Shown piece by piece: positions 21,641 to 50,600 of a DNA stretch of 64,000 nt. The translations under genes were made by a program, and so were the position numbers. The DNA lies in contig NW_005434662.1 in NCBI RefSeq assembly GCF_000315625.1, positions 847,615-911,614 on the forward strand. Reading direction: 5' to 3'. The notes under the pieces were generated by a model. The model was not told where the DNA came from. It worked only from the letters and a program-made list of their open reading frames with translations, and did not search any database. Source of the stretch: Guillardia theta CCMP2712 (Eukaryota > Protista > Cryptophyta). Position 1 is the stretch's first letter, and each line of letters begins with the position of its first letter.

Positions 21641-21900
21641 AAACTCCCCTAGACGCGATACCCGGAAGCAGCCGACTGACCACTGTCAGTCAAGACGTCC
21701 GCCGCCGCCACAAAGCTGGCGGCCGCGGACGGAGAAAGGGCAGCCGCCGACAAGGAGCCGGCGCTGCCCGGGGGTCCGCCTGTGAGGGAGGCTGGGCACA
21801 GGAGCACGGTACCGCTCGAGGTGACGCATGTAGTCCTCTTCGCTAGCCTCCGAGTCAGCAGTAGCCGAGACCAACACCACCCGTGACGGCGGCGACGCCG
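21641..21900 (-). mobile_element. Diverged fragment of the CRE-like retroelement ORF 3' end
   Basis: Reverse complement matches 38880-39140 (ADSEASEEDY..LERYR..TDSGQSAASGYRV*). Confidence 0.9.
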
Positions 21901-22915
21901 CATCGATGCAGACGACGCATTGCTGGCTGCGATCTTATGATCAAATAGACTTGAGGAGAACATGATGACGGAGCCGCTAGTCGCTCCCCGTACACAACCC
22001 TGGGTCCTACAAGCGAATCGTCGGTGATGGCCCAGTAAGGGACTTTGCCGTAAGTCCAGACCAGCCACATGGTCACCCCGAACGCCCACACGTCGCTCTT
22101 CTCCGAGTACTGTCTTCTCTCGATGCTCTCCGGCACCATCAACCGCACGGGCCGAGCCGTTGCAAGGTGATCCTGCGGGTCGAGGCTGAACACAAGCACG
22201 TTCCTTGCTGCCAGGTCCCGATGCACAACCTCAAGCAGCGACAGCTGGTCCATCCCGTCACAGATCTGCCTCGCCACCTGCAGCTGCACCAGCGGACTCA
22301 TCGTCTCCTCCTCCTCAGCAAAGTTGGACAAGATCACATCGAGAGAGCCCTTGGAAGCAAACTCAGTCAACAGGCAGTAGTCGCCGGAAGCTGCTGGAAG
22401 ATCTTGACCTCCTGCTCGAACTCCTCTCTCCTTCCAGTGGGTCCGCTGCCTAGGATTCGCTGGATGGCAACCTCAGCGCTACTCCCCCGCGGCTGCAGCC
22501 ACCGAGCCCTGTAGACGAGCTTGAAGGAGCCTGAGCCGATCTACTGCAGGTGCGTGAAGGACTTGAAGTCCAATGATGATATATGGCCAAGAAAAAAATC
22601 TTGCTGCTCTCTCTCTCTGGGCTGCTTCTCCTCCCTCGCTTTGCGCTCCTGGTCCTCCTGTTGCACGCATCCTTTCGTCGATCCAGTGTATGGTAGAGAC
22701 ATGTACGGGCCGGAGATTTCTCTGGTATCAGGCTGGTAAGGAGTGCTCCAGACGGCAGTTCCAGTAAGAATCTCATTCGCCGGGTAAGTGCCGTGGGCAG
22801 TTCCAGGAGTCGTGTAGGTGCCGTAGACAATTTCAGGAGTTTTGCCGTAGATAATTTCAGGAGTCGCGACATAGTTCACGTTGGCAGTTCCAGGAGTCGT
22901 GTAGGTCCCAGTCAC
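21901..22915 (-). pseudogene. Tyrosine-kinase-type protein kinase pseudogene
   Basis: G-loop IGSGSF, HRDLAARN, SDVWAFGVTMW and YGKVPY. In-frame stop at 22541, a frameshift, and the DFG segment is missing. Confidence 0.85.
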
Positions 22916-29210: not shown

Positions 29211-29314
29211 AGACGACTACTCGGTGAGAGACGACTACTCGGTGAGAGACGACTACTCGGTGAGAGACGATTACTCGGTGAGAGACGACTACTCGGTGGG
29301 AGACGACTACTCGG
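29211..29314 (+). repeat. 18-bp tandem repeat AGACGACTACTCGGTGAG, ~5.8 copies
   Basis: Directly visible just after the helicase stop, at the left edge of the island. Confidence 0.95.
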
Positions 29315-29439: not shown

Positions 29440-32400
29440 GGCGGCTGCTTTGTTTTGCTTGAGGCACTTTTTACCTTCTGCCAGTAAATCCTTTATTCGG
29501 CGGCCTCCTAAACCAATAAAACCTAAAACCCTAAACCAAGCGCGAAGGCAAGCATAACAAAGCAGGAACAAGCTAAACCCGCTTGCACACAGCGCACAGC
29601 GAGAAGCTGCACAAACACACACAAAACACAAGCCCGAAAAGAACCAGCACTGCTGGCAGCAGGACGGATTTACTGGCAGAAGGTAAATGGCAACCGTCAG
29701 CAGACCCGGCATCGCCAGCCCAAGCGCGAAGCCGCGCAGACAAGCAGCCTAAGGGTCAAGCAATCAAGCAACAAGCAGCAGGAGCATGCAGGAGGAATAA
29801 CATCCCTTAGACGCGATACCCGGAGGCAGCCGACTGACCACTGTCAGTCGAGACGTCCGCTGCCGCCACAAAGCGGGCGGCCGCGGACGGAGAAAGGGCA
29901 GCCGCCGACAAGGAGCCGGCGTTGCCCGGGGGTCCGCCTGGGGCAGCGGACGGAGGGAGGCTGGACACAGGAGCACGGTACCGCTCGAGGTAGTCCTCTT
30001 CGCTAGCCTCGGAGTCAGCGGTAGCCGAAACCAACACCGTGGTGTCGAGCTCTCCGGAGGCACCCGACGTCACAGTGAGGGACGGAGACGCCTCGCCAGC
30101 TCCGCGCCAAGGCGAAGTGTTTCCCCCATCGGAGTCGGAGACCTCCGGCGAAGACTCCTCCTCGGGCGACTCGACAAAGTCCGAGGAGGAGCTGTCCTCG
30201 GGCTCGAGAAGTGCTTGTGCCCGCAAGGGCGTCATGCGCCTCGCACCCGGAAACAAGAGCGCCTCCAGTGTCAGCTGCATAGTGAGGCAATCCGTATTCC
30301 AGAGGGGCTGATAGGTGGCGGCGCGTTTGCGAGCTAAGACCTGAGCAGCAGGTCCGTACGCGGCCGCCAGCTTTGCTGACAGTGGTCAGTCGGCTGCCTC
30401 CGGGTATCGCGTCTGAGGGATTTTCTTCCTCCTGCATGCTCCTGCTGCTTGTTGCTTGATTGCTTGACCCTTAGGCTGCTTGTCTGCGCGGCGGGCTTCG
30501 CGCTTGGGCTGGCGATGCCGCGTCTGGTCATCTTGCGGCCATGAGGATGGGAGGGTACCTGCCGTCGAGGGATTTTATTCCTCCTGCATGCTCCTGCTGC
30601 TTGTTGCTTGATTGCTTGACCCTTCGGCTGCTTGTCTGCGCGGCTTCGCGCTTGGGCTGGCGATGCCGGGTCTGCTGACGGTTGCCAGCAGTGCTGGTTG
30701 TTTTCGGGCTTGTGTTTTGTGTGTGATTGTGCAGCTTCTCGCTGTGCGCTGTGTGCCAGGAGGGTTAGCTTGTTCCTGCTTTGTTTTGCTTGAGGCACTT
30801 TTTACCTTCTGCCAGTAAATCCTACTTTCGAGAACGAGAGTCCCCTCGAGCGTTCATCCCTCTTGCCATCTCGACGGACGGTACCCTGAGGCACTTTTTA
30901 CCTACTGCCAGTAAATCCTACTCCATCTGCATCCTGACACCCTCCGCTTCNNNNNNNNNNNNNNNNNNNNNNNNNNNNNNNNNNNNNNNNNNNNNNNNNN
31001 NNNNNNNNNNNNNNNNNNNNNNNNNNNNNNNNNNNNNNNNNNNNNNNNNNNNNNNNNNNNNNNNNNNNNNNNNNNNNNNNNNNNNNNNNNNNNNNNNNNG
31101 ACGCTGGAGGCGCTCTTGTCTGGTGCGAGGCGCATGACGCCCTTGCGGGCGCAAGCACTTCTCGAGCCAGAGGACAGCTCCTCCTCGGACTTTGTCGAGT
31201 CGCCCGAGGAGGAGTCTTCGCCGGAGGTCTCCGACTCCGATGGGGGAAACATCCAGAGTGGCGCCGACGATCGGCGCGGAGCTGGCGAGGCGTCTCCGTC
31301 CCTCACTGTGACGTCGGGTGCCTCCGGAGAGCTCGACACCACTGGGGTGCTTGCTGCTGGTCCGAGCTCGCCTGCTTCCTCCCCGGCATCAGTCGGGTCA
31401 CGCCGGTCCTTGGGCATTGCTGCGGCGTCGCCGCCGCCGTCACGGGCGGCTACCGCTGACTCGGCTACCGCTGACTCGGCTACCGCTGACTCGGCTACCG
31501 CTGACTCGGAGGCTAGCGAGGAGGACTACCTCGAGCGGTACCGTGCTCCTGTGTCCAGCCTCCCTCCGTCCGCTGCCCCAGGCGGACCCCCGGGCAGCGC
31601 CGGCTCCTTGCAAGTTGTCGGCGGCTGCCCTTTCTCCGTCCGCGACCGCACAGTGGTCAGTCGGCTGCTTCCGGGTATCGCGTCTAAGGGATTTTCTTCC
31701 TCCTGCATGCTCCTGCTGCTTGTTGCTTGATTGCTTGACCCTTAGGCTGCTTGTCTGCGCGGCGGGCTTCGCGCTTGGGCTGGCGATGCCGCGTCTGGTC
31801 ATCTTGCGGCCATGAGGATGGGAGGGTACCTGCCGTCGAGGGATTTTATTCCTCCTGCATGCTCCTGCTGCTTGTTGCTTGATTGCTTGACCCTTCGGCT
31901 GCTTGTCTGCGCGGCTTCGCGCTTGGGCTGGCGATGCCGGGTCTGCTGACGGTTGCCAGCAGTGCTGGTTGTTTTCGGGCTTGTGTTTTGTGTGTGTTTG
32001 TGCAGCTTCTCGCTGTGCGCTGTGTGCCAGGAGGGTGCTTGATTGCCTGACGCTTTGTTTTGCTTGAGGCACTTTTTACCTTCTGCCAGTAAATCCTATG
32101 CCTTCAAGTCCTCCTCGCTAGCCTCCGAGTCAGCGGTAGCCGAGTCAGCGGTAGCCGCCCGTGACGGCGGCGACGCCGCGGCAATGCCCAAGGACCGGCG
32201 TGACCCGACCGATGCCGGGGAGGAAGCAGGCGAGCTCGGACCAGCAGCAAGCACCCCAGTGGTGTCGAGCTCTCCGGAGGCACCGACGTCACAGTGAGGG
32301 ACGGAGACGCCTCGCCAGCTCCGCGCCGATCGTCGGGGCCACTCTTCCTCCTGCATGCTCCTGCTGCTTGTTGCTTGATTGCCTGACCCTTAGGCTGCTT

Positions 32401-34995
32401 GTCTGCGCGGCTTCGCGCTTGGGCTGGCGATGCCGCGTCTGGGTGCCAGCAGTGCTGGTTCTTTTCGGGCTTGTGTTTTGTGTGTTTGTGCAGCTTCTCG
32501 CTGTGGACTGTGTGCCTGCCGGTTCATCTTGTTCCTGCTTTGTTTTGCTTGAGGCACTTTTTACCTTCTGCCAGTAAATCCTATGTCACTCGAAGGGTGT
32601 CCCCCATCGGCAGCTTGTTCCTGCTTTGTTTTGCTTGAGGCACTTTTTATCTTCTGCCAGTAAATCCTATATCTATCGGACAAAAGAGACCTTTGGCGAA
32701 GACTCCTCGGGCGACTCGACAAAGTCCGAGGAGGAGCTGTCCTCTGGCTCGAGAAGTGCTTGCGCCCGCAAGGGCGTCATGCGCCTCGCACCAGACAAGA
32801 GCGCTTCCAGCGTCAGCTGCATAGTGAGGCGCTGATAGGTGGCGGCGCGTTTGCGAGCCAAGACACCATAGGATTTACTGGCAGAAGATAAAAAGTGCCT
32901 CAAGCAAAACAAAGCAGGAACAAGCTGAACCGGCAGGTACACAGTCCACAGCGAGAAGCTGCACAATCACACACAAAACACAAGCCCGAAAAGAACCAGC
33001 ACTGCTGGCACCCAGACGCGGCATCGCCAACCAGAGCGCGAAGCCGCGCAAAAAACCTCAGCAGCAGGTCCGTCATCAGGCACGAAGTGCCGACCAAACG
33101 CCGCATCCTCAAGAGGCATTGAGCGCTGAGCAATGATGTCCGCCAGATACCAGATGAAGCGGAGGGTGTCAGGATGCAGGGTACCGTCCGTCGAGATGGC
33201 AAGAGCATAGGATTTACTGGCAGAAGGTAAAAAGTGCCTCAAGCAAAACAAAGCAGGAACAAGAGGGATGAACGCTCGAGGAGGAGTAGTCATGGCATAT
33301 GCAGCGCGATGTTTGCGAATCTTCTCAGACGCTGCAACATGGAGGGCGTCGAGGTTGACCTCCCCCCACTTGGTCAGGTCGGCAGAGCTACCAATGTAAG
33401 GGTGGACATAGGATTTACTGGCAGAAGGTAAAAAGTGCCTCAAGCAAAACAAAGCAGGAACAAGCTGAACCGGCAGGCACACAGTCCACAGCGAGAACCT
33501 GCACAAACACACACAAAACACAAGCCCGAAAAGACCAGCACTGCTGGCACCCAGACGCGGCATCGCCAGCCCAAGCGCGAAGCCGCGCAGACAAGCAGCC
33601 TAAGGGTCAGGAGGCACTTTTTACCTTCTGCCAGTAAATCCGACAAATAAAATCCCTCAGACGCGATACCCGGAGGCAGCCGACTGACCACTGTCAGTCG
33701 NNNNNNNNNNNNNNNNNNNNNNNNNNNNNNNNNNNNNNNNNNNNNNNNNNNNNNNNNNNNNNNNNNNNNNNNNNNNNNNNNNNNNNNNNNNNNNNNNNNN
33801 NNNNNNNNNNNNNNNNNNNNNNNNNNNNNNNNNNNNNNNNNNNNNNNNNNNNNNNNNNNNNNNNNNNNNNNNNNNNNNNNNNNNNNNNNNNNNNNNNNNN
33901 NNNNNNNNNNNNNNNNNNNNNNNNNNNNNNNNNNNNNNNNNNNNNNNNNNNNNNNNNNNNNNNNNNNNNNNNNNNNNNNNNNNNNNNNNNNNNNNNNNNN
34001 NNNNNNNNNNNNNNNNNNNNNNNNNNNNNNNNNNNNNNNNNNNNNNNNNNNNNNNNNNNNNNNNNNNNNNNNNNNNNNNNNNNNNNNNNNNNNNNNNNNN
34101 NNNNNNNNNNNNNNNNNNNNNNNNNNNNNNNNNNNNNNNNNNNNNNNNNNNNNNNNNNNNNNNNNNNNNNNNNNNNNNNNNNNNNNNNNNNNNNNNNNNN
34201 NNNNNNNNNNNNNNNNNNNNNNNNNNNNNNNNNNNNNNNNNNNNNNNNNNNNNNNNNNNNNNNNNNNNNNNNNNNNNNNNNNNNNNNNNNNNNNNNNNNN
34301 NNNNNNNNNNNNNNNNNNNNNNNNNNNNNNNNNNNNNNNNNNNNNNNNNNNNNNNNNNNNNNNNNNNNNNNNNNNNNNNNNNNNNNNNNNNNNNNNNNNN
34401 NNNNNNNNNNNNNNNNNNNNNNNNNNNNNNNNNNNNNNNNNNNNNNNNNNNNNNNNNNNNNNNNNNNNNNNNNNNNNNNNNNNNNNNNNNNNNTCTTCTC
34501 AGACGCTGCAACATGGAGGGCGTCGAGGTTGACCTCCCCCACTTGGTCAGGTCGGCAGAGCTACCAATGTAAGGGTGGACCAACGTCACGTCATAGGGGG
34601 TCAGAGGATTTACTGGCAGAGGGTAAAAAGTGCCTCAAGCAAAACAAAGCAGGAACAGCTGCATATGCCATGACTCCTCCTCCTCGAGTGTTCATCCCTC
34701 TTGCGTGACATTCTTACCGTGCCCGAGTAAAACTCAGTTGCACAGCCGAAGGACGTACTCGCTCAAGTCGCAGGATAGGGTCTTGCAGTCTACCATCTTC
34801 GCTCATTTTTCTGAGCGAGGCTATAGGATTTACTGGCAGAAGATAAAAAGTGCCTCAAGCCTTTGGAAGTGCTTCCGCGGCTCATCTCACCCAGCAAGCG
34901 CTTGCAGTACTGCAGGTGGATTTGACTGACATCCTCGACACCACTAGCCTGATCCAGGCGATCAAGCACTTTTTACCTTCTGCCAGTAAATCCTA
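29440..34995. mobile_element. Nested patchwork of 5'-truncated copies and fragments of the CRE-like element, with 14 copies of its 3'-terminal motif
   Basis: Motif on + at 29461, 30792, 30888, 32066, 32551, 32637, 33611 and 34966; on - at 29666, 32871, 33210, 33411, 34606 and 34826. Most intervening DNA matches 36840-39260 in either orientation. Contains two N gaps. Confidence 0.92.
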
Positions 34996-37900
34996 TATTG
35001 CAAGCGCTACAGCTCCTTTGCGGGGACCGATGACCAAGGGTGGAGGATTCGGCAACACCTGTCACCCCTTTCTAGTCATCCTGCAGCTTTGAAGCTCTAC
35101 TGCCAACATATCCTCCAAGGGGTCCTTCTTGGCCGGATGCCGGATCTTCTTATTCCTGCCCTGTCAGCCATTCGTCGAGGAGGCAGATTTATTCCCCTCT
35201 CCAAGGGAGCTGATAAACCTGGTCTCCGGCCAATTGTCATCGGTTCTGCACACCGTCGACTCGCGACGAAGCTTGCTTTGGCAGGGATTCGCTCATTTCT
35301 TGACCAGCACTTCCTCTCGTCTCACCCTCGAGCGATTCAGTTCGGGCTCGATCGAGACGGCTGTCTGAAGTTCTCGCAAACCGCGTCAGCGCTCCTGCCC
35401 CTTCACGCTCGCGGTGATGATGAGGATGTTGCCAACCCCACAGTGCTGGTGAGTTTGGATGCAAAGAACGCCTTCAACTCCCTCGACCGCCAGGCTCTCT
35501 TCGATGCAATCGAGGGACGTGCGAGTCGCGACTACTTTGATGGGAGCATCACTGAAGGCGCAAGCTTGCCCTCTTGCGAGCATCTCCGTTTGTTCGCCTC
35601 CTACCTCTCCAGCTACTATGGAGACTCTGCTGACCTTCGACTCTTTCACAAAAGTCAGTCAGCCTCCGTTCAGTGTACCTCGGGCGTCTGTCAGGGCGAT
35701 GTCCCCTCCAGCGTGTTTTTCTGCCACAGTATCCACCCCCTGCTCCTCCATATCGCAGAGCTTTTTCCCTCTGTTCGAGTCTTGGCCTATGCTGACAACG
35801 TCGTGCTTGTCGGTCCACTCGAGGATGCCGTTGCAGCTACGTCCGCTATGAAGAAGTACATGGTGGCTGATCTGAAGCTAGAGATTCAACCTCGCGAGTC
35901 GAAAGTTTACATCCCCTCCTGGCATCAACACCCTGATCTCTCGCAGCTGAAGAAGAGCCTTAAGCGCCGTCTCAAGACTCAACTTCTTCACTTCGAGGTC
36001 GTCACTGGCGGGATTACACTTGGCGGCCTGCCTATCGGCACGGATGGATTTCATGCTAGTCAGCTCCGAGCGAAGGTTTCTACCCTCAACGAAGAGCTCT
36101 CAAAGCTCGGGCTCGTCCAGCATGGCTTCATGTTCAAGACGCTGGTGAGGGCGAGCCATCTCCAGAAGCTGCGCTTCTTCCTCCAGGGGTCATCTCCGTT
36201 TCTCCCGCGGGTCCAATCACAGATTCGTCGCTTTGACCTCTCTGTCCACCTGGCGCTTGAGAAATACCACCGCTGGCCTTCCTCGCAGTACCTCGCCGCG
36301 CATCCCGACCTGCTAGAGTTTGCGAGGTTCAAGCGGGAGCTTCCGCATAGTCGGGGAGGGGACGAGTTCACGCCCTCTGAGGGTCTACACCCCGCTGTTT
36401 ACTATACGGCTATCGCTCGCTTCCTCGCTTGGTACTCTGACCAGCCCATGTCCCGGACCTTGCCCTCTCCTCATAGCCTGGACGTTCACTGCTCGAGATC
36501 TCTCCGTGCCCAGAAGCATCCTCTGGCGACCTTCTTCGTTGAGGCGCACGACTTCGTTCATAATGCTGGAGCGATCCTCTACCGTCGTGTCAAGGCTCCT
36601 GCACCGGCTGCAGATGGCGCGGCGATCCCACCTGCCCCGGCTGCTGTGCCTGATGACGCAGGACGCCCCCCGGCATCTGTGGTACACATCCCTGGTTTGC
36701 GCGCTCTCGTCGACTCGTCTCATGAGCACTTCATTCCTCCCCCTGCGCAGCGAAATGTGACCCCTCTTGTCATGCGCGTCTTCCCTCGCCATGTGCATGC
36801 TCGCGCTGCGCTGACCGATCAGCAGCGTGATATCCTCACCTTGCACAGCCGCAGGACACACTCGCTCAAGTCGCAGGATAGGGTCTTGCAGTCTACCATC
36901 TTCGCTCATTTTCCTGAGCGAGACCTGAGCCACTCTCCGATGCGAGTCTCGAGCTACTACCCCCTCAAGGCCTTCCCGCACCGCTATGCTCAGATGCTCG
37001 ACTGCTATCTCCATGGCATGCCGATCTGCCAGTGTCCGACGGAATGTGATGGATGTCAGCGCGAGCTCGATCCCTCCGTTGCTGCACATCATCTCCAGAC
37101 CTGCAAACGCCGATCCTCCAAGCTTCCCACGGCGCATGACAACCTTACTCGTACGATTCGGTCGATGCTGAACGAAGCTGGTCTTCAGAGCGTCATCGAT
37201 ACAGTGGGGGATCCTCGTTCTCGACGGCAGGTACCCTCCCATCCTCATGGCCGCAAGATGAAGGGCGATATCCACATTCCTGGAATCCGCGATCGAGGGT
37301 CCGAGCAGTACGAGGGCTTGATGGCGGACGTGACGTTGGTCCACCCTTACACGGACGTTCACTGCTCGAGGTCTCTCCGTGCCCAGAAGCATCCTCTGGC
37401 GACCTTCTTCGTTGAGGCGCACGACTTCGTTCATAATGCTGGAGCGATCCTCTACCGTCGTGTCAAGGCTCCTGCACCGGCTGCAGATGGCGCGGCGATC
37501 CCACCTGCCCCGGCTGCTGTGCCTGATGACGCAGGACGCCCCCCGGCATCTGTGGTACACATCCCTGGTTTGCGCGCTCTCGTCGACTCGTCTCATGAGC
37601 ACTTCATTCCTCCCCCTGCGCAGCGAAATGTGACCCCTCTTGTCATGCGCGTCTTCCCTCGCCATGTGCATGCTCGCGCTGCGCTGACCGATCAGCAGCG
37701 TGATATCCTCACCTTGCACAGCCGCAGGACACACTCGCTCAAGTCGCAGGATAGGGTCTTGCAGTCTACCATCTTCGCTCATTTTCCTGAGCGAGACCTG
37801 AGCCACTCTCCGATGCGAGTCTCGAGCTACTACCCCCTCAAGGCCTTCCCGCACCGCTATGCTCAGATGCTCGACTGCTATCTCCATGGCATGCCGATCT

Positions 37901-39280
37901 GCCAGTGTCCGACGGAATGTGATGGATGTCAGCGCGAGCTCGATCCCTCCGTTGCTGCACATCATCTCCAGACCTGCAAACGCCGATCCCGGAGTCCAAG
38001 CTTCCCACGGCGCATGACAACCTTACTCGTACGATTCGGTCGATGCTGAACGAAGCTGGTCTTCAGAGCGTCATCGATACAGTGGGGGATCCTCGTTCTC
38101 GACGGCAGGTACCCTCCCATCCTCATGGCCGCAAGATGAAGGGCGATATCCACATTCCTGGAATCCGCGATCGAGGGTCCGAGCAGTACGAGGGCTTGAT
38201 GGCGGACGTGACGTTGGTCCACCCTTACATTGGTAGCTCTGCCGACCTGACCAAGTGGGGGGAGGTCAACCTCGACGCCCTCCATGTTGCAGCGTCTGAG
38301 AAGATTCGCAAACATCGCGCTGCATATGCCATGACTACTCCTCCTCGAGCGTTCATCCCTCTTGCCATCTCGACGGACGGTACCCTGCATCCTGACACCC
38401 TCCGCTTCATCTGGTATCTTGCGGACATCATTGCTCAGCGCTCGATGCCTCTTGAGGATGCGGCGTTTGGTCGGCACTTCGTGCCTGATGACGGACCTGC
38501 TGCTGAGGTCTTGGCTCGCAAACGCGCCGCCACCTATCAGCGCCTCACTATGCAGCTGACGCTGGAAGCGCTCTTGTCTGGTGCGAGGCGCATGACGCCC
38601 TTGCGGGCGCAAGCACTTCTCGAGCCAGAGGACAGCTCCTCCTCAGACTTTGTCGAGTCGCCCGAGGGGGAGTCTTCGCCGGAGGTCTCCGACTCCGATG
38701 GGGGACACCCTTCGAGTGGCGCCGACGATCGGCGCGGAGCTGGCGAGGCGTCTCCGTCCCTCACTGTGACGTCGGGTGCCTCCGGAGAGCTCGACACCAC
38801 TGGGGTGCTTGCTGCTGGTCCGAGCTCGCCTGCTTCCTCCCCGGCATCGGTCGGGTCACGCCGGTCCTTGGGCATTGCCGCGGCGTCGCCGCCGTCACGG
38901 GCGGCTACCGCTGACTCGGCTACCGCTGACTCGGAGGCTAGCGAGGAGGACTACCTCGAGCGGTACCGTGTTCATGTGTCCAGCCTCCCTCCGTCCGCTG
39001 CCCCAGGCGGACCCCCGGGCAGCGCCGGCTCCTTGTCGGCGGCTGCCCTTTCTCCGTCCGCGGCCGCCCGCTTTGTGGCGGCAGCGGACGTCTCGACTGA
39101 CAGTGGTCAGTCGGCTGCCTCCGGGTATCGCGTCTGAGGGATTTTATTCCTCCTGCATGCTCCTGCTGCTTGTTGCTTGATTGCTTGACCCTTAGGCTGC
39201 TTGTCTGCGCGGCTTCGCGCTTGGGCTGGCGCTGCCGCGTCTGGGTGCCAGCAGTGCTGGCGTCTGGGTGCCAGCAGTGC
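34861..39280 (+). mobile_element. Non-LTR retrotransposon with restriction-like endonuclease (CRE-like); 5' end missing, disrupted
   Basis: RT motifs AG.D..GW..HL, LRPIVIG, QFG, SLDAKNAFNSL, SGVCQGD..S and YADN; zinc knuckle CDGC..HHLQTC; RLE HD..KGDI..DVTLVHP..K.RKH..FIPLAISTDG. ORF stop at 39137, followed by 3' UTR. Confidence 0.92.
36480..38229 (+). repeat. Internal tandem duplication (36480-37351 and 37353-38229) of the linker, CCHC and first part of the RLE
   Basis: Near-identical copies with an 873-bp in-frame period. The second copy has a 5-nt insertion (CGGAG, ~37990) that shifts the frame. Confidence 0.93.
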
Positions 39281-39960
39281 TCGCTAGGAACACGGTACCG
39301 CTCGAGGTAGTCCTCCTCGCTAGCCGGGCAACGCCGGATTCTGACCTTGGTGCTGAGGAGGACCCTAAGTGCCGACCAAACGCCGCATCCTCGAGCCAGA
39401 GGACAGCTCGAGTCGCCCGCCGGCCCGAGGAGTGTTCGCCGGAAGTCTCCTACTCCGATGGGGGACTTTGAAACATCCGGAGTGGAGCCGACGAGCTCAC
39501 TGCAACGTCGGATGCCTCCGGAGGCACTTTTTACCTTGTAGCCGCGTAGACAAGCAGGCTGAGGGTCAAGCAACAATCAGCAGGAGGGGAGGGACTTCCG
39601 AGCTGAAACTCCCTTAGACGCGATACCCGGAAGCACTGATCCGACTGATTCCTGCTTTTTTTTTGCTTGAGGCACTTTTTGAACAAGCTAAACCTGCATG
39701 CACACATCGCACAGCGAGAAGCTGCACAAACCGTGGCACACACAAAACACAAGACCAAAAGTAACCAGCACGTTTTGTGTGTTTGTGCAGCTGCATGCGG
39801 GTTTATCTAATCCGACTGAACATTGTCAGTCGCCGCCGCAAAGACAAGTCAGCCAGAGCTCTGCAGTCTCACCGACGAGGTGAGACGCAGTGACATGAGG
39901 ACGGAAGCGCTCATGAATGTAGAGGAAGACTCGGAGGTTGGAAGACATAGGATTTACGGG
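39281..39960. mobile_element. Older, diverged scrambled fragments of the same retroelement family
   Basis: Degenerate matches to the ORF end and 3' UTR in both orientations; partial terminal motifs at ~39521, ~39669 and ~39950. Confidence 0.8.
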
Positions 39961-40332
39961 CCATAAGCCCTCCTGCCAATGGGAGGTGGCCTCTCGGGTC
40001 CATGGCAATCTGCTGCAACGTGGGGGTACCGGGCCTACCACCTCCACTGGTGGAATTCTGCAGGGCAACGGGTGAGTGGTCGACCCGAAGGACTACCCCT
40101 GTGATACCTTTACTTACCGGGAATAGGGGGGGTGGTATACAGTACCGGTGGCTGAAAAGATAGACATGTAAATATTTCGCGGGACGTGATTGGTGTCCCC
40201 TACCCTACCGTGGTTTACAACTGAGGGGAATAAGGGGAAGGGGGGTAGTCAACCACCCCCGAGGGGAGAAAAGCGGAGTCGGCGGGCGAGTCCCCGTGAA
40301 AAATGGAAATGCGAGGTGTGTGCCGACAGGGA

Positions 40333-40833
40333 ATGGGAGAAGGTGTTCGATTGTTGGCTTTGCTCTTCTTTTCGACTTTTTTGAGCGTCAATGGCTCGTT
40401 CATTGATTGTCCCAGTTGTCCCAGCAACAGTTATGAAATTTTTGGTTGCAGTACTTCCTATGGAACATGCTTGGACGTCAATACAGGGAACACAGCACCG
40501 GCATGCTGGTGTCGATGCATCACTGGGTATTATTATTACCAGTACACTGACAGCCTGGGAGTCGTTGTGGATGCCTGTTCGCCTTGCACAACGTGCTCTG
40601 CCAACCAGTATCAGTACAGCACATGCTCAGCCAATGGTCAAGATACTGTTTGTAAGACTTGCAGTGTCTGCCCGACGGGGAAGTATGCATCATCTGCGTG
40701 CACACGTACCACGGACACAGTCTGCACATAATGATTGTACCCGGTATGCCCATATTATGAATTCGATGGCGGAAAGGCAAGCGATTGCCTCCTTTGCCCA
40801 GTTGGATCGTACAGCAATTATCCGGAGACATAA
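40333..40833 (+). pseudogene. Secreted TNFR/NGFR-type cysteine-rich repeat protein, truncated
   Basis: Signal peptide MGEGVRLLALLFFSTFLSVNG; CSPCTTC..C..QDTVC..C..C..C..TDTVC repeats. The Cys-rich frame continues past TAA-TGA at 40729-40734 (CLLCPVGSYSNYPE). Confidence 0.65.
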
Positions 40834-42121: not shown

Positions 42122-42192
42122 GTTTACTCGCAGGAGGTAAAAAGTGCCTCAAGCAGAAGAAAGCAGGAACAAGCTAAACCTGCATGCACACA
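42122..42192 (-). mobile_element. Diverged short 3'-terminal copy of the CRE-like element
   Basis: TTTACTCGCAGGAGGTAAAAAGTGCCTCAAGCAG..AAAGCAGGAACAAGCTAAACC matches the terminal motif. Confidence 0.85.
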
Positions 42193-42460
42193 GGAAGTTA
42201 GCCTAGATAAAGGGCCTGACATGCGCCCGCAATTGGTCTCCGGTGGCTTCCCGGGTGTGACCAACCTGACCTCGCTTCTCAATGACAAGGGGAGCGCGGC
42301 TATTGTTCGGTTTGTTATGACTGTGAAATCAATAGTTGGCTTGCGATCTACGAGCGGGTGACAGATGCTTATGGAGCCTTCAGTGTCTCTGCAAGTATGG
42401 CCTGCGCCTGGTCGGACAGTGGCAACAAGCCCTGGGTCAAAAGACTTCAATGTGTATAGC

Positions 42461-42832
42461 AGCGAGATTGACTACTTCATAGACTACATCAAAGCGAGAT
42501 TGACTACTTCATAGACTACATCAAAGCGAGATTGACTACTTCATAGACTACATCAAAGCGAGATTGACTACTTCATAGACTACATCAAAGCGAGATTGAC
42601 TACATCATAGACTACATCAAAGCGAGATTGACTACTTCATAGACTACATCAAAGCGAGATTGACTACTTCATAGACTACATCAAAGCGAGATTGACTACT
42701 TCATAGACTACATCAAAGCGAGATTGACTACTTCATAGACTACATCAAAGCGAGATTGACTACTTCATAGACTACATCAAAGCGAGATTGACTACTTCAT
42801 AGACTACATCAAAGCGAGATTGACTACATCAA
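42461..42832 (+). repeat. 32-bp tandem repeat AGCGAGATTGACTACTTCATAGACTACATCAA, 11 copies plus a partial
   Basis: Counted directly; nearly perfect, with an internal GACTAC(T/A)TCA subrepeat. Confidence 0.97.
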
Positions 42833-43747
42833 CCGACTGGATGTCGGAGTTTGCCATCGACAAAGAGAAAACAACGATGGACGTAGCCAAAGCCAAGGAA
42901 TGGTTCAGGGAGGACAATTACCGTCGATTGAAGAGAATGGTGCATTCATATTACATTCATACCTCAAGCTCCTTCTGGGATGATGCAGAGATATGCACTT
43001 TCAGGGGACTATGCATATTATCCACCACATTGCGATTCGCCATAGCGGGTAACTTTGTCATGCACCCGGGTCAGGTGGATCCCATAGAAATGCACTTCCC
43101 TGACTACAAACGACCAACAAAGAGCAACATTTGTACATATACAAGCTGAAGAAGACATCAATAGCGATCTACATTCAAGAATGTCTTACTGTCTTACTGG
43201 AGAACGGAATGCGAAGTCCTCATCTTACCATCTTGTTTTAATTACACATCCTCACTGGAAAAGTACATCGGCATGAATCGAAGCGAGCTGCTCTCAAGGT
43301 GGTCACCGCCCCTCCCTTGCGACCGTTCTGCCAAGCCGCGCATGTCGTACACCATAACAGAGAGGAAAGCCCGTCATTCAACCGACCAGTATGAGAAGGC
43401 TTGAAGTTTTTGACGCAACAACAGGGTTTTCATTGTACATACGAGGATTGAAAAAGCAAGAGACGCGGAAGCTCTCAAGGGCAGGCTCTCCACACCAAAC
43501 GCCAGATCCCCCCCCCATCCCTGCCTCCATATTCGACGAGGTAGACCTGCTCAAGGAGCTCAAGGCGGCCGCCCTCCTCTACGACTACGCCGCCGAGTAC
43601 CTCACCGACGACGACGACGACAAGGCGGGGGCGGCGGAGAGATACCTGAACATAGTCAAGTCGCTGGCAAAGAGGCCAGAGGCGTACCCTTGTTCGATTT
43701 CCCAGTAAATTCTCGCTGTCGCGCATAAATCTTGCAATGGCATGATA

Positions 43748-43940
43748 GCCGGCGCTGCCCGGGGGTCCGCCTGGGGCAGCGGACACATGGAGGCTGGGCG
43801 CATGCTGACGGTACCGCTCCAAGTGATGCAAACAGTCCTCCTCACTGTCCTCAGCTGGCGCAGCGGCAGCCGAGACCGAGACCGCCAGTGACAGCAACGA
43901 TGCCGCAGCTGTGTAAGTAACCAGCACTGCTGGCAACCAG
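43748..43940 (-). mobile_element. Diverged CRE-like element fragment at the right edge of the island
   Basis: LERYR..SAAPGGPPGSAG translation and CCAGCACTGCTGGCAACC UTR motif. Confidence 0.8.
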
Positions 43941-47638: not shown

Positions 47639-50600
47639 ATGACGTCGATCACGTCGAAGAAAGCATCACACAGTCACACGGTGTCGAGCCTCGTTTCTCT
47701 CTTGTTGCTGGCGTTCAACTTTGTTCATTCCCAAGCTCGAAAGGACAAGCGGAGAGCATGCATCGGGGTGCTGACAGTCCTCTTGGTGGTCACCTTCATC
47801 GGGTTTGTGTACAACGTGATCCTGAGGAGCCCTGTCATCTTCCTCAAGCTCGCTGAGACTCAGGTGGGGGAGACGGACATGGTTATCTTTCCGAGCCTCA
47901 ACCGACTGGATCCTCTCCTCAACCTGGACAAGCAGATGGAGCAGGTCGACGTGTACCCCTTCTTCAATGCCTCTCAAGTCCGCGACACGCTCTCTGACAT
48001 CCCGCAAGTCTTCGGCGTGTCTCCTCGTTGGATCGTCCGGGGATCGATCGCTAGCAGCAGGGAGCCGAGCAAGCGCGTGGTGACCTACATTCTCGTGTGC
48101 GACTTGGAAGAGGAGGAGAGGATGGGGGTGGGACGCGCATGGCCGTACAGGAGGCTCGGGGCCTTGGAGGCGCATGTGACTGCGTCTGTCCTCAAGTCTC
48201 TCAAAGTTCGTCCGAATCGCGGGGATCGCGTGCTGATCGACATGGGTATGCAGAAGCTTCTCAACTCCTTCGGGGTCAACGCAGACGCTCTCAAGCAGCT
48301 TCTCTTCCGCTCTGTGCTGGAGGACGGGGTCACAGTCAGGCTCAACGGGACGATGATCCGCCTGTACCTGGAGGAGCAGGGCTTCCTGGTCCCCCCCGGG
48401 CTCATCAGTGACACCATCGTGACGCGGCAGCCAGTCTCGTCCCTCGTCAACGTCGACCGACTGATCGAGGCGAGCATCGAGGGCGTCAAGCGAGGAGAGC
48501 TGATGAACCTCGACGTGTCTGTAGCCGACGCCATCGAGAACTCCTACGAGAAGTGGCCGCCCATCGGGAATATCGTGCTGCTGGAAGCCAAGTACTTCTT
48601 GCAGGCTGTGAAGGCCTCGATGAATCAAGTGCCGCTGGTGCAGATGCTCAACCTCGGAGTGCTGGTGAACCGAACTGGCAACGTAGAGGAGGCCCTCCTG
48701 CTCACAGAGACGCCCCTCACGGACGAGTGGCTCAACTTCAACCTCATGGATTACGCTTTCCTCGTGCTGGTCCAGTACCGTGACCGATACATCGCCTACC
48801 TCAAGAGCGAGGCCGGTCGACTGTCCGACATGGTCAAGTTCTCAAACGAGGTCGGAGAGAAGCTTGGGTTCACGTCCAACCTCTCCATCACCCTCCCCAT
48901 CGCCACGGCTCTGCAGCCTCTCATGTTTCTGCGCGTCTTCCTGCAGCAGATTTTCAACGCTGTCGTCGCTGTGCTGGTCGTCCATGGCTGCATCACCGTC
49001 TACTCGCTGCTGCTCACCGACGTCAACGCGCGCACCTACGAGTATGGCATGCTCAGGGTGATGGGCTTGACCAAGACCTCCCTCCTCACCCTCCTCCTAG
49101 TCCAGGCCCTCTACTATGCCGTGCCCGGCCTTCTCCTCGGCCTGCTCCTCTCTTGGGCTGCTTCTTTCCCCGCCATCGATGCCATCTCCAAGTACGCATT
49201 AGTGTCCTTGGACTACAACCTGGAGGCCATGGCGCTGACGTCGGCGATCGCCATCGGGATAGCGATGCCGCTGGCAGGAAACATCTTCCCGATCAAGCGA
49301 GCTCTCTCCCGCACCCTCGCCGAGAGCTTGGACGTCTACCACAAGACCCACGCGGAAACCATCGTGCATTTCCAGCGGCTAGCAGACCTGGGCCTCTCTC
49401 CCTCCCAGGTGCTTCTCCCTTTCCGCTTCACGCCTGACAATGCTGCAGACGTTCGGAGCCGTGGGGATGGTGGTGACGGGGGTCCTGATCTATTATGTCA
49501 TCCCGCTCTCCTTCCTCCTGCAGAACTTCAGCCTCCTCCTGTCCTCGCTCAACTTCATCCTCCTCGGAACTGTTGCCGGATTGATCCTCCTCTCCGTGCT
49601 TCTCCAGCCCACGGGCGAGTGGCTCGTGGCGCAGTTGATCATGCAGGGGGAGGACAGGAGGTTCTTGGACATCGTGCTCAAGAATCTGACGTCGCATCGG
49701 CAGCGGAGCATGAAGACGTCGCTCATCTTCTGCTCGACCCTCGCGTTCATCGTCTTTGCGGGCTCCATGTTCTCGCTGCAAGCTCACTCCATCATCGGCA
49801 ACATCAAGGTCCTCGGCCCCTCCGCTCCTGGCGCCTGACGAGCGGCAGGTGGCGTTAGGGAGCGACATCAGGATAGAGAGCAGTCAAGGGCCCCTTAAGG
49901 AGTCGAACCTCTCCTCCTTCCTCCTCCGCGAGCGCCTCCGCCCTGACAGCTGCGTCCTTGACTTCGCCTGGGCCTCTTGGCCCTTGTGGAACGTGGATCC
50001 TCCAGTCTCTCGCGTGATCATGGGAAACATGGTACCCCTCCTCGTCTCTCGCTCCTCGTCTCTCGTTGTTCGTCTGACGCGGTCCGGCAGGTTGGGTTTC
50101 CCCAGGGCTTCAACGCTGAGACTGTCGCCATCTCCGACAACTATCTCGACGTGACCTACAGCGAGTTCTTCGTCCCTCTCAGCGCCGACGGCTGCTCTCG
50201 CCAAGACTGCAGCAGAGGCCTGGACTTCACCGTCAACCCGAACCGCAATGAGGACCAGCTTGAGGTGTCTCTCCCTCCCTCTTGTGTCCTCGTCCTCCGC
50301 TCACTCTCGGGCTCAGGTCAATGTTCTCAGTGGAGCTCAGCACGCGTGCGAGAGGGTCCCTTCCTCTTGCAGGCCGCTGGAGTCGAGCAGGGCGAGGACG
50401 AGGCCTCGAGTAGCGGCACTGAGGCTGAGGAGAGGAGAGTGACGAGGCTGCGCAGGTTCGAGGGATCCTGCCGGCGAGCCTGGCGACGTCGATAGGAGCA
50501 GAAGTGAAGAGCCTCCTGGTGCTCGTGCTCATCGCACAGAACGAGCGCGAGTACTCCCCCTCGCGCTTCCGCAGGAACATCTTCATCGAACTGGAGCCTA

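What the first reader, a model, noticed from the sequence alone, without database searches (positions are those of the whole stretch)
29440..35005. Self-targeting retrotransposon builds a repeat-spacer-like array from its own 3' end and fragments of its own body
Seen: the ~31-nt terminus GAGGCACTTTTTACCTTCTGCCAGTAAATCC (usually followed by TA) occurs 14 times in 5.5 kb (8 on +, 6 on -). Each copy carries 0 to several hundred nt of upstream element sequence. Most are followed by a few unassignable bases and then a different sense or antisense piece of the same element (RT, RLE, ORF tail or UTR). I saw no copy in any host gene in the window. Known: RLE-bearing non-LTR elements (R2, CRE/SLACS, MoTeR, Cnl1) prime reverse transcription at their 3' end and usually hit one fixed site. 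Inference: here the target seems to be the element itself, at many positions and on both strands. That would fit homology- or RNA-guided (R-loop) targeting, or strong local re-insertion, producing a self-limiting trap or archive locus.
Basis: partly seen in the sequence, partly recalled or inferred. Interest (0 to 1): 0.9.

Follow-up and report, generated by a model that had tools for sequence, protein, structure and literature searches.

The report
Self-nesting retrotransposon cluster, candidate centromere
A young jumping gene of the alga Guillardia theta piles up by inserting into its own older copies at one spot per large assembly scaffold, the pattern expected of a centromere; nothing here supports a CRISPR-like or RNA-guided archive.

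Summary
The 31-nt terminus occurs 14 times in 29.4-35.0 kb (8 on +, 6 on -). Each copy is a 5'-truncated 3' end (22 nt to about 1 kb). Each is followed by a short tail and then another piece of the same element.

The element is a single-ORF non-LTR retrotransposon of Guillardia theta CCMP2712, with RT, a CCHC motif and a restriction-like endonuclease (RLE). These are real nested insertions. The host copy continues across the insert with target-site duplications (TSDs) of about 5 bp, and uninserted (empty-site) forms exist in four public sequencing runs. Both assembly gaps lie inside single collinear copies.

Genome-wide there are 699 termini, confined to one interval of 30 kb or less per contig. 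These intervals are internal and lie 530-880 kb from assembled telomeres.

Insertion sites show no motif and no strand bias, and they follow target availability. Related RLE families in the same genome are dispersed. Region-level targeting therefore explains the "self-targeting", and the region is probably the centromere. Homology or RNA guidance is not needed.

The closest analogue is the Zepp/ZeppL clusters of green algae, built here by a different endonuclease class in a cryptophyte. Other first-stage readers of this scan noted the same clusters on other contigs; none had been followed up.

Centromere identity and the exact order of pieces at this locus remain unproven.

The parts
29445..29491 (+). 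Left-edge insertion: 47-nt 3' end of the element, inserted in non-element DNA just downstream of the SNF2/RING gene
29492..29548 (.). Unassigned junction DNA holding a degenerate telomere-like stretch (CCTAAACC..AACCCTAAACC)
29549..30357 (-). Antisense copy (C-terminal ORF tail plus 3' UTR, lacking its last ~30 nt), carrying a 22-nt micro-insertion of the terminus at 29666-29687
30376..30822 (+). 447-nt 5'-truncated copy whose UTR holds a private 42-nt antisense patch. That patch junction is found only twice in the genome, both in this window
30844..32096 (+). Sense copy (RLE region to 3' end) with the same private UTR patch. It spans gap 30951-31099 collinearly and is interrupted by a 32-nt terminus micro-insertion at 30887-30926
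32107..33407 (-). Antisense host copy interrupted by four insertions: 32345-32586 (+, 237 nt, TSD CACTC), 32612-32694 (+, 56 nt), 32865-33051 (-, 180 nt) and 33206-33263 (-, 54 nt)
   Evidence: empty-site joints 32862>33055 and 33199>33260
33411..33645 (.). Two 3'-end fragments lying 5' end to 5' end: 199 nt on the - strand (33411-33609), then 31 nt on the + strand (33611-33641) with its tail
33646..34592 (-). Antisense copy spanning gap 33701-34493; flanks are collinear, 789 element positions against 793 N
34593..34860 (.). Two short - strand 3'-end fragments (52 and 35 nt) with two small sense body pieces between them
34861..37351 (+). Long sense copy A (pre-RT region, RT, CCHC, first half of RLE). 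It is broken by a 34-nt micro-insertion at 34968-35001 flanked by an AAGC duplication
37352..39260 (+). Sense copy B (CCHC, RLE, Ser/Ala-rich C-terminal tail, first part of 3' UTR). It restarts about 875 nt upstream of where A ends, so the 986-aa ORF 35089-38049 is an A/B chimera
39288..39942 (.). Older degenerate fragments of the element (76-97% identity) at the right edge of the cluster
42123..42193 (-). Old relic of the 3' end (89% identity) in non-element DNA, followed by the ATTG-type tail
43747..43909 (-). Old relic of the ORF tail (74% identity)
21641..21909 (-). Old relic of the ORF tail/UTR (84% identity), 7.5 kb left of the cluster

Best explanation
The locus is one of many nests of a recently active, single-ORF non-LTR retrotransposon (RT + CCHC + restriction-like endonuclease) of Guillardia theta.

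Shown:
- New copies integrate with a short staggered break, leaving TSDs of about 5 bp.
- They are heavily 5'-truncated, with a median of about 95 nt.
- They carry a few templated tail bases after ...AAATCC (TAT or ATT types).
- They land in older copies at positions without sequence or strand preference.
- Across the genome, the family is confined to one interval of 30 kb or less per contig.

Inferred:
- Integration proceeds by target-primed reverse transcription.
- The integration complex is recruited to a chromosomal domain that exists once per chromosome, most likely the centromere, and not to its own sequence.
- That domain is by now 75-99% element DNA, so nearly every insertion hits the element itself. 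This produces the patchwork of 3' ends and body fragments.
For: Element class:
- RT with a YADN box, then a Cys/His (CCHC-type) motif, then GD...D(V/F)T...K motifs. These are conserved in relatives and align in register with R2's RLE.
- The best solved relatives are R2 proteins, E 2e-9.
- Pfam finds no other domain, so no AP endonuclease.

Real insertions:
- Ten simple nested events on one reference piece have a continuous host copy. Six show a 3-6 bp duplication (CACTC, GTCCG, GCTGC and others); the rest show shorter duplications, 1-3 nt losses, or a doubtful mapping.
- Empty-site joints appear in up to four independent runs.
- An independent ENA contig shows other nested junctions that are absent from the reference.

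Distribution:
- 699 termini genome-wide and 0 in the reversed control.
- All listed hits fall in one interval of 30 kb or less per contig, in at least 89 contigs. These include 33 of the 36 largest. The one outlier is C21:590 kb.
- Positions are at 22-86% of contigs 0.93-1.42 Mb long.
- The four assembled telomeres (C12 and C8 starts, C3 and C5 ends) lie 530-880 kb from the clusters.

No sequence guidance:
- Information content is 0.13 bit or less at every position around 72 sites.
- Target strand is 48 sense and 37 antisense.
- Site usage roughly follows segment abundance.
- Clusters are 75-99% element DNA, which by itself predicts the observed 85/87 self hits.

Family-specific targeting:
- Related RLE families in the same genome (36-45% identity) lie dispersed on the arms, far from the clusters.

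Insertion in trans:
- There is no excess similarity within clusters.
- Copies are 94-99% identical across contigs.

Long occupancy of the region:
- Relics of 74-89% identity sit in non-element DNA around the young core.
Against: - Centromere identity is inferred only from the one-per-contig pattern. There are no CENH3, genetic or cytological data.
- No contig among C1-C20 is shown to run from telomere to telomere, so 'one per chromosome' is really 'one per scaffold'.
- No chromatin-reading domain was found. The conserved N-terminal helical region resembles only the pre-RT extension of LINE-1 ORF2p, and weakly (Z 5.4-6.9).
- Site usage departs mildly from availability (chi-square p 0.025). A few positions were hit repeatedly, with different tails, on different contigs. 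A weak local preference cannot be excluded.
- The clusters are full of assembly gaps, and no long reads were available.
Confidence: 0.6

Rival explanations
1. Region-targeted, but not the centromere. The element homes to some other domain present about once per scaffold, such as a heterochromatin island or a safe-haven locus kept silent by the host.
For: The same distribution data as above. Nothing in the sequence marks kinetochore function. GC content of the cluster is unremarkable.
Against: A strict single site per roughly 1-Mb scaffold, internal and far from telomeres, is what centromeres give. The only well-studied analogues, Zepp and ZeppL, proved centromeric (PMC3446292; bioRxiv 10.1101/2025.03.28.645958). 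No other once-per-chromosome domain is known.
Confidence: 0.13
2. Insertion is random, and only copies in the clusters survive. Purifying selection and deletion remove insertions from the gene-dense arms.
For: The genome is gene-dense. Nested insertions in dead copies are harmless. Old relics persist near the core.
Against: Even the youngest copies (exact 31-mers, 98-100% identical ORFs) are all in clusters. Of about 260 listed exact-match termini (not de-duplicated), only C21:590292 lies far from its contig's cluster. Related RLE families with long open frames do persist on the arms. So arms are not cleared of such elements.
Confidence: 0.12
3. True self-homing. The protein or its RNA recognises element DNA, so the element is its own target wherever it lies.
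For: 85/87 flanks are element sequence. Some positions were hit repeatedly (element coordinates near the RLE and ORF tail). One parent-daughter pair lies 1.27 kb apart.
Against: - No motif and no strand bias.
- Tails instead of microhomology at the 3' junction.
- Usage follows availability.
- Edge insertions and relics lie in non-element DNA (29445-29491, 42123-42193, 21641-21909).
- Self-recognition alone does not explain exactly one cluster per contig.
- The terminal RNA has no significant fold (z -0.5 to +0.8).
Confidence: 0.1
4. The patchwork is an assembly artefact: collapse or mis-joining of a repeat in a Sanger-era assembly.
For: Clusters are rich in N gaps: 9.6 kb of 18 kb in C34, and two gaps here. 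Some blocks recur within a cluster at about 1.8-kb spacing in C5. Only short contigs were available from public runs.
Against: - Junctions have the anatomy of retrotransposition: exact 3' terminus, templated tail, TSDs of about 5 bp, and 5' microhomology.
- Gap flanks are collinear, with matching sizes.
- Independent data sets hold many terminus-to-body joints and the empty sites.
Confidence: 0.03

Closest known systems
Zepp (Coccomyxa subellipsoidea) and ZeppL (Chlamydomonas and relatives) LINE clusters
   Same: - Strictly one cluster per chromosome or scaffold.
- Clusters are built by nested insertion into existing copies.
- Arrays are dominated by 5'-truncated 3' ends.
- The family is essentially absent elsewhere in the genome.
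- Clusters are taken as centromeres, and ZeppL has since been shown to be CENH3-bound (PMC3446292; PMC8226300; bioRxiv 10.1101/2025.03.28.645958).
   Different: - Zepp and ZeppL are L1-clade elements. By general knowledge they have an N-terminal AP endonuclease and poly(A) tails.
- This element has a C-terminal RLE and no poly(A): it ends in ...AAATCC plus a 3-4 nt lineage-specific tail.
- Its host is a cryptophyte.
- Its clusters are small (about 2-30 kb as assembled).
Cnl1 (Cryptococcus) and MoTeR (Magnaporthe) arrays
   Same: Non-LTR elements that accumulate as arrays at one kind of chromosomal site on every chromosome, with dynamic expansion (bioRxiv 10.1101/2021.08.11.455996).
   Different: Those arrays are subtelomeric or telomere-repeat associated. 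Here the four assembled telomeres have no array, and the clusters lie 530-880 kb inside.
R2 and other site-specific RLE elements (CRE/SLACS, NeSL, R4, Utopia)
   Same: Domain order RT - CCHC - PD-(D/E)XK endonuclease in one ORF. R2 proteins are the nearest solved structures. TPRT-type products with 5' truncation.
   Different: By general knowledge, those elements cut one defined sequence in a repeated gene. Here 72 sites share no motif. No N-terminal zinc-finger or Myb domain was detected. Clade placement is unresolved.
Centromere-specific LTR retrotransposons of plants (CR chromoviruses) and Tcn elements of Cryptococcus
   Same: Retroelements that target or survive in centromeric chromatin and nest within each other (general knowledge).
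   Different: A different element class and integration chemistry (integrase, often with a chromodomain). No such domain was found here.

Membership tests
RLE-bearing non-LTR retrotransposons (R2/CRE/NeSL/R4 group) | Reverse transcriptase of the non-LTR type in a single long ORF | tested here: met
   Pfam RVT_1 is weak (25.9-29.0 bits, just under the 29.6 cut-off). A profile of 12 relatives hits R2 RTs at E 1.8e-9 to 2.3e-5. A relative, P0004, has one 1511-aa ORF.
RLE-bearing non-LTR retrotransposons (R2/CRE/NeSL/R4 group) | CCHC-type Cys/His motif between RT and endonuclease | tested here: met
   CQCPTECDGCQ...HHLQTC in the window copy. CxxC...HHxxTC is conserved in the alignment consensus and aligns with R2's motif.
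RLE-bearing non-LTR retrotransposons (R2/CRE/NeSL/R4 group) | C-terminal PD-(D/E)XK restriction-like endonuclease | tested here: met
   GD...(L/V)xD(V/F/Y)(T/S)...K are conserved in 8 of 9 relatives that cover the region. They are in register with R2's KPD / VDVTV / EKVRKY. This is motif-level only: that stretch alone has no significant HMM score.
RLE-bearing non-LTR retrotransposons (R2/CRE/NeSL/R4 group) | No AP-type (Exo_endo_phos) endonuclease | tested here: met
   Pfam finds only RVT_1 in full-length relatives P0004 and P0174.
RLE-bearing non-LTR retrotransposons (R2/CRE/NeSL/R4 group) | Insertion at one fixed target sequence (usual for the group, not strictly defining) | tested here: not met
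   72 mapped sites have 0.13 bit or less per position, lie on both strands, and are spread over more than 4 kb of element sequence.
CRE clade specifically (CRE1/2, SLACS, CZAR, Cnl1, MoTeR) | RT phylogeny grouping with CRE-clade references | not testable with these tools
   No named CRE-clade sequences were reachable. The nearest named relatives are unannotated proteins of Cafeteria and Salpingoeca. Other first readers' label 'CRE-like' is untested.
Zepp/ZeppL-type centromeric LINE clusters | One cluster per chromosome, and absence elsewhere | tested here: met
   Met at scaffold level. There is one interval of 30 kb or less per contig in at least 89 contigs, with one outlier. Whole chromosomes are not assembled.
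Zepp/ZeppL-type centromeric LINE clusters | Nested insertion giving arrays of 5'-truncated 3' ends | tested here: met
Zepp/ZeppL-type centromeric LINE clusters | L1-clade element with AP endonuclease | tested here: not met
   The element is RLE-type. It works like Zepp but is not a member.
Zepp/ZeppL-type centromeric LINE clusters | Association with CENH3 / centromere function | not testable with these tools
   No chromatin data are available.
CRISPR-like repeat-spacer array | Direct repeats in one orientation, separated by spacers of regular length from foreign DNA | tested here: not met
   8 + and 6 - copies at irregular spacing. The 'spacers' are the interrupted host copies of the same element.

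The most novel reading that the evidence does not exclude
These nests are the centromeres of the Guillardia theta nuclear chromosomes. The RLE element would be actively recruited to centromeric (CENH3) chromatin by its uncharacterised N-terminal region. That would make it the first centromere-homing LINE of the restriction-like-endonuclease class and the first centromere candidates in any cryptophyte. It would also be a convergent counterpart of Zepp/ZeppL, and might itself help to specify centromere identity.
Probability: 0.5. Interest if true: 0.7.

Novelty: new variant of a known kind. Interest (0 to 1): 0.55.

Why it matters
I know of no description of cryptophyte nuclear centromeres, and the four library searches on Guillardia or cryptophytes found none. 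A simple sequence marker (the 31-mer) that tags one site per scaffold gives direct candidates for CENH3 mapping. It also helps with scaffolding and with artificial-chromosome work in a model secondary alga.

For transposon biology, it shows an endonuclease class usually tied to one fixed DNA sequence behaving as a region-specific, sequence-indifferent integrator. It thereby reproduces the Zepp/ZeppL architecture in an unrelated lineage. That makes the question of how LINEs find centromeres testable in a second, independent system.

It also removes a tempting but unsupported reading, the RNA-guided self-targeting archive.

Tried and rejected
- Rfam scan of the window: no family matched, so no ribozyme or spliced-leader RNA.
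- Spliced-leader-gene idea for the reverse complement of the 31-mer: dropped. Conservation extends upstream of the terminus on the sense strand, which marks it as a 3' end with 5' truncation.
- 'Open frames' of 2559 and 1920 aa reported in C34 and C32: the C34 one runs through N gaps; only part of the C32 one could be read.
- Terminal stem-loop (lead from note s1-437755): only a 4-bp stem, with z-scores -0.5 to +0.8.
- Target motif search: nothing found.
- Within-cluster relatedness: not significant.
- The two termini without element flanks abut the end of another dispersed repeat (177 copies). That repeat probably inserted into the cluster later, so they give no evidence on targeting.
- Subtelomeric-array reading: rejected, because assembled telomeres have no arrays.
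- N-terminal domain:
  - The protein atlas gave chance-level scores.
  - The homologue search found only the query itself.
  - Foldseek against PDB found nothing.
  - VIA-align gave only weak matches to the LINE-1 ORF2p pre-RT region.
- PDB phmmer with the single protein: no hit.
- Long-range validation of this locus with reads: not possible, because all runs were short Logan contigs.
The flank census therefore rests on 87 of about 699 termini.
- Literature: no paper on Guillardia or cryptophyte centromeres or this element in the held library. The G. theta genome paper and Repbase are not searchable here.

Full report
**Observation**

The 31-mer occurs 13 times in the window with up to 3 mismatches, all within 29461-34993 (8 on +, 5 on -). 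Shuffled sequence gives none. A 22-nt partial copy on the - strand at 29666-29687 makes 14.

I tiled the region against natural copies of the element. Every terminus is the 3' end of a 5'-truncated fragment, 22 nt to about 1 kb long. Each is followed by a short unmatched tail and then by a sense or antisense piece of the same element.

**Assembly gaps**

Gap 30951-31099 (149 N) is flanked by sense body sequence exactly 149 element positions apart. Gap 33701-34493 (793 N) is flanked by antisense body 789 positions apart. Each gap is therefore consistent with the unread middle of one continuous copy.

**Organism and element**

Protein matches name the genome as Guillardia theta CCMP2712. The window is contig C12:847615-911614.

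The ORF carries these features:
- an RT domain with a YADN box;
- a Cys/His motif, CQCPTECDGCQ...HHLQTC;
- an endonuclease signature, GDIHIPG / ADVTLVHP / EKIRKHR.

The last three motifs are conserved in distant relatives and align in register with the restriction-like endonuclease of R2. A profile of 12 relatives has R2 proteins as its best solved matches, at E 2e-9. Pfam sees only a weak RVT_1 and no AP endonuclease.

A 71%-identical relative from another public run has one 1511-aa ORF. Copies in the genome are mostly 94-99% identical, and many have long open frames. The family is therefore young.

The 986-aa ORF at 35089-38049 is a chimera of two copies. The second restarts about 875 nt upstream of where the first ends.

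**These are insertions, not chimeric artefacts**

In ten simple cases both flanks map to one natural reference copy, and the host copy continues across the insert.
- Six show duplications of 3-6 bp (CACTC, GTCCG, GCTGC and others).
- The remaining four show shorter (1-3 bp) duplications, 1-3 nt losses, or a doubtful mapping.
- Microhomology is frequent at the 5' junction.

Contigs of four public runs contain the uninserted forms, with joints 33199>33260 and 32862>33055. One DNA run also holds dozens of other terminus-to-body joints with different tails. An independent ENA metagenome contig shows two further nested micro-insertions. That junction is absent from the reference.

Only short contigs were available, so the long-range order of pieces at this locus is not independently confirmed.

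**The tail**

After ...AAATCC come a median of 8 unmatched bases, starting with TAT in 37 of 85 termini and ATT in 13 of 85. Tail class correlates with a SNP 57 nt upstream (p 2e-6). Tail plus terminus is sometimes duplicated together. The first bases of the tail are therefore copied from the RNA and mark source lineages. They are not target sequence. There is no poly(A). The terminal RNA has no significant predicted fold.

**Genome-wide pattern**

The terminus occurs 699 times with up to 2 mismatches, and never in the reversed control. Four independent listings cover exact 31-mers, the ORF, and two tail-specific patterns. Together they place the family in at least 89 contigs, including 33 of the 36 largest.

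Within each contig all hits fall in one interval of 30 kb or less. The single exception is one copy at C21:590 kb, 58 kb from that contig's cluster. In contigs of 0.93-1.42 Mb the clusters lie at 22-86% of the length.

The telomere repeat is CCCTAAA. It is assembled at the start of C12 and C8 and at the end of C3 and C5, 530-880 kb from those contigs' clusters, with no array beside it. The clusters are therefore internal, not subtelomeric. No contig among C1-C20 is shown complete from telomere to telomere, so the rule holds per scaffold.

**What is targeted**

The two exceptions abut the end of another dispersed repeat that probably arrived later.

By my arithmetic, the family makes up roughly 0.5% of the genome. 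The self-hit rate is therefore more than 100-fold above random. Within the clusters, however, 75-99% of the bases are element DNA. Any insertion confined to the cluster would hit the element about as often as observed.

Further points:
- The 72 mappable sites share no motif (0.13 bit or less at each of 40 positions).
- Target strand is 48 sense against 37 antisense (z about 1.2, my arithmetic).
- The distribution along the element roughly follows how often each segment is present (chi-square p 0.025).
- A few positions were used repeatedly, with different tails, on different contigs. A weak local preference remains possible.
- Edge insertions and relics of 74-89% identity lie in non-element DNA around the young core (29445-29491, 21641-21909, 42123-42193, 43747-43909).

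None of this fits guidance by homology or by an R-loop. All of it fits a target defined at the level of a chromosomal domain.

**Controls within the genome**

Two related RLE families (36-45% protein identity) have copies with long open frames. These are scattered along the arms, hundreds of kilobases from the clusters of the same contigs. Confinement is therefore a property of this family, not a general fate of such elements. This weakens a selection-only account.

Copies inside one cluster are not more alike than copies from different clusters (permutation p 0.09-0.27). Insertions therefore come largely from a genome-wide pool.

One local event is visible here. A 42-nt antisense patch in the 3' UTR occurs only twice in the genome. 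Both occurrences are in this window, 1271 bp apart, in copies with different 5' truncation points and different 3' flanks.

**Possible targeting domain**

The region upstream of the RT that is conserved among relatives folds as a helical domain (mean pLDDT 68). It resembles only the pre-RT extension of human LINE-1 ORF2p, and weakly (Z 5.4-6.9, against 4.1 or less for unrelated rows). No chromatin reader or DNA-binding domain was identified. The first roughly 235 residues are low-complexity. How the element finds its domain is unknown.

**Comparison with known systems**

[quoted passage not shown] It also matches the ZeppL clusters of Chlamydomonas (PMC8226300), now shown to be CENH3-bound (bioRxiv 10.1101/2025.03.28.645958).

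Those are L1-clade elements. By general knowledge they have an AP endonuclease and poly(A) tails. This element belongs to the RLE class, whose known members are typically specific for a single sequence. It therefore works like Zepp but is not a member of that family.

Cnl1 and MoTeR arrays are similar in being self-accumulating, but they are subtelomeric (bioRxiv 10.1101/2021.08.11.455996).

I found no paper describing this element or cryptophyte centromeres in the held library. The G. theta genome paper and Repbase could not be searched.

Other first-stage readers of this scan noted the same kind of cluster on other contigs and suggested a centromere. None had been followed up at that time. 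I reached the same reading, before seeing their notes.

**Verdict**

My best reading, at about 0.6, is a young RLE-type LINE that integrates without sequence preference into a domain present once per chromosome, probably the centromere. The nest grows by repeated, heavily 5'-truncated insertion into older copies. This is a new variant of a known kind, of moderate to good interest, mainly because it gives candidate centromeres for a cryptophyte and a second, independent system of centromere-confined LINEs.

Noticed in passing
window 29510-29540; also C1:686,770-686,800 (held segment C1:680289, position ~6497): Short telomere-like stretches (AACCCTAAACC; the genome's telomere repeat is CCCTAAA) sit at or just outside the edge of two of the 14 cluster segments examined. 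They are far too long to be chance in 157 kb. Their origin is unknown. Zepp has been linked to telomere repair in Coccomyxa.
   Followed up: partly
G000 C19:796-800 kb, C22:193 kb, C31:86 kb, C4:599 kb and others: At least two further RLE retrotransposon families (36-45% protein identity to this one; P0174-like, 1468 aa) have long open frames. They are dispersed on chromosome arms and not in the clusters.
   Followed up: partly
C3:646,128; C1:686,491 and 175 other places: A dispersed repeat beginning (T)GTAAACCAAGACGACTTAC, often in pairs about 1.2 kb apart (LTR-like or a 1.2-kb unit). It is occasionally inserted into the clusters.
   Followed up: partly
window 42461-42831: Near-perfect tandem array, 32-nt unit x 11.6 copies (99% matches), between cluster relics.
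   Followed up: no
window 29211-29314: 18-nt tandem repeat x 5.8 copies, directly downstream of the stop codon of the SNF2/RING-type gene that borders the cluster.
   Followed up: no
L032:8540-9100 (C32:584.5-585.1 kb) and L057:180-340: The element's ORF contains a long trinucleotide (Gln/Ala-rich) repeat upstream of the RT. Its length varies between copies, and it is nearly absent from the 71%-identical relative P0004.
   Followed up: partly
window 47639-49858 (+): A 739-aa ORF with an FtsX-like permease domain (E 1e-11) in this nuclear genome, next to a 909-N gap.
   Followed up: no
window 40303-40731: A Cys-rich ORF lies between the cluster core and the outer relics. DNA that may be coding thus lies within about 0.4 kb of the nest.
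   Followed up: no
C5:696,762 / 698,659 / 700,412 and C32:580,633 / 582,656: Identical terminus-plus-flank blocks recur at about 1.8-2.0 kb spacing inside clusters. This is either tandem segmental duplication within the nests or assembly duplication.
   Followed up: no
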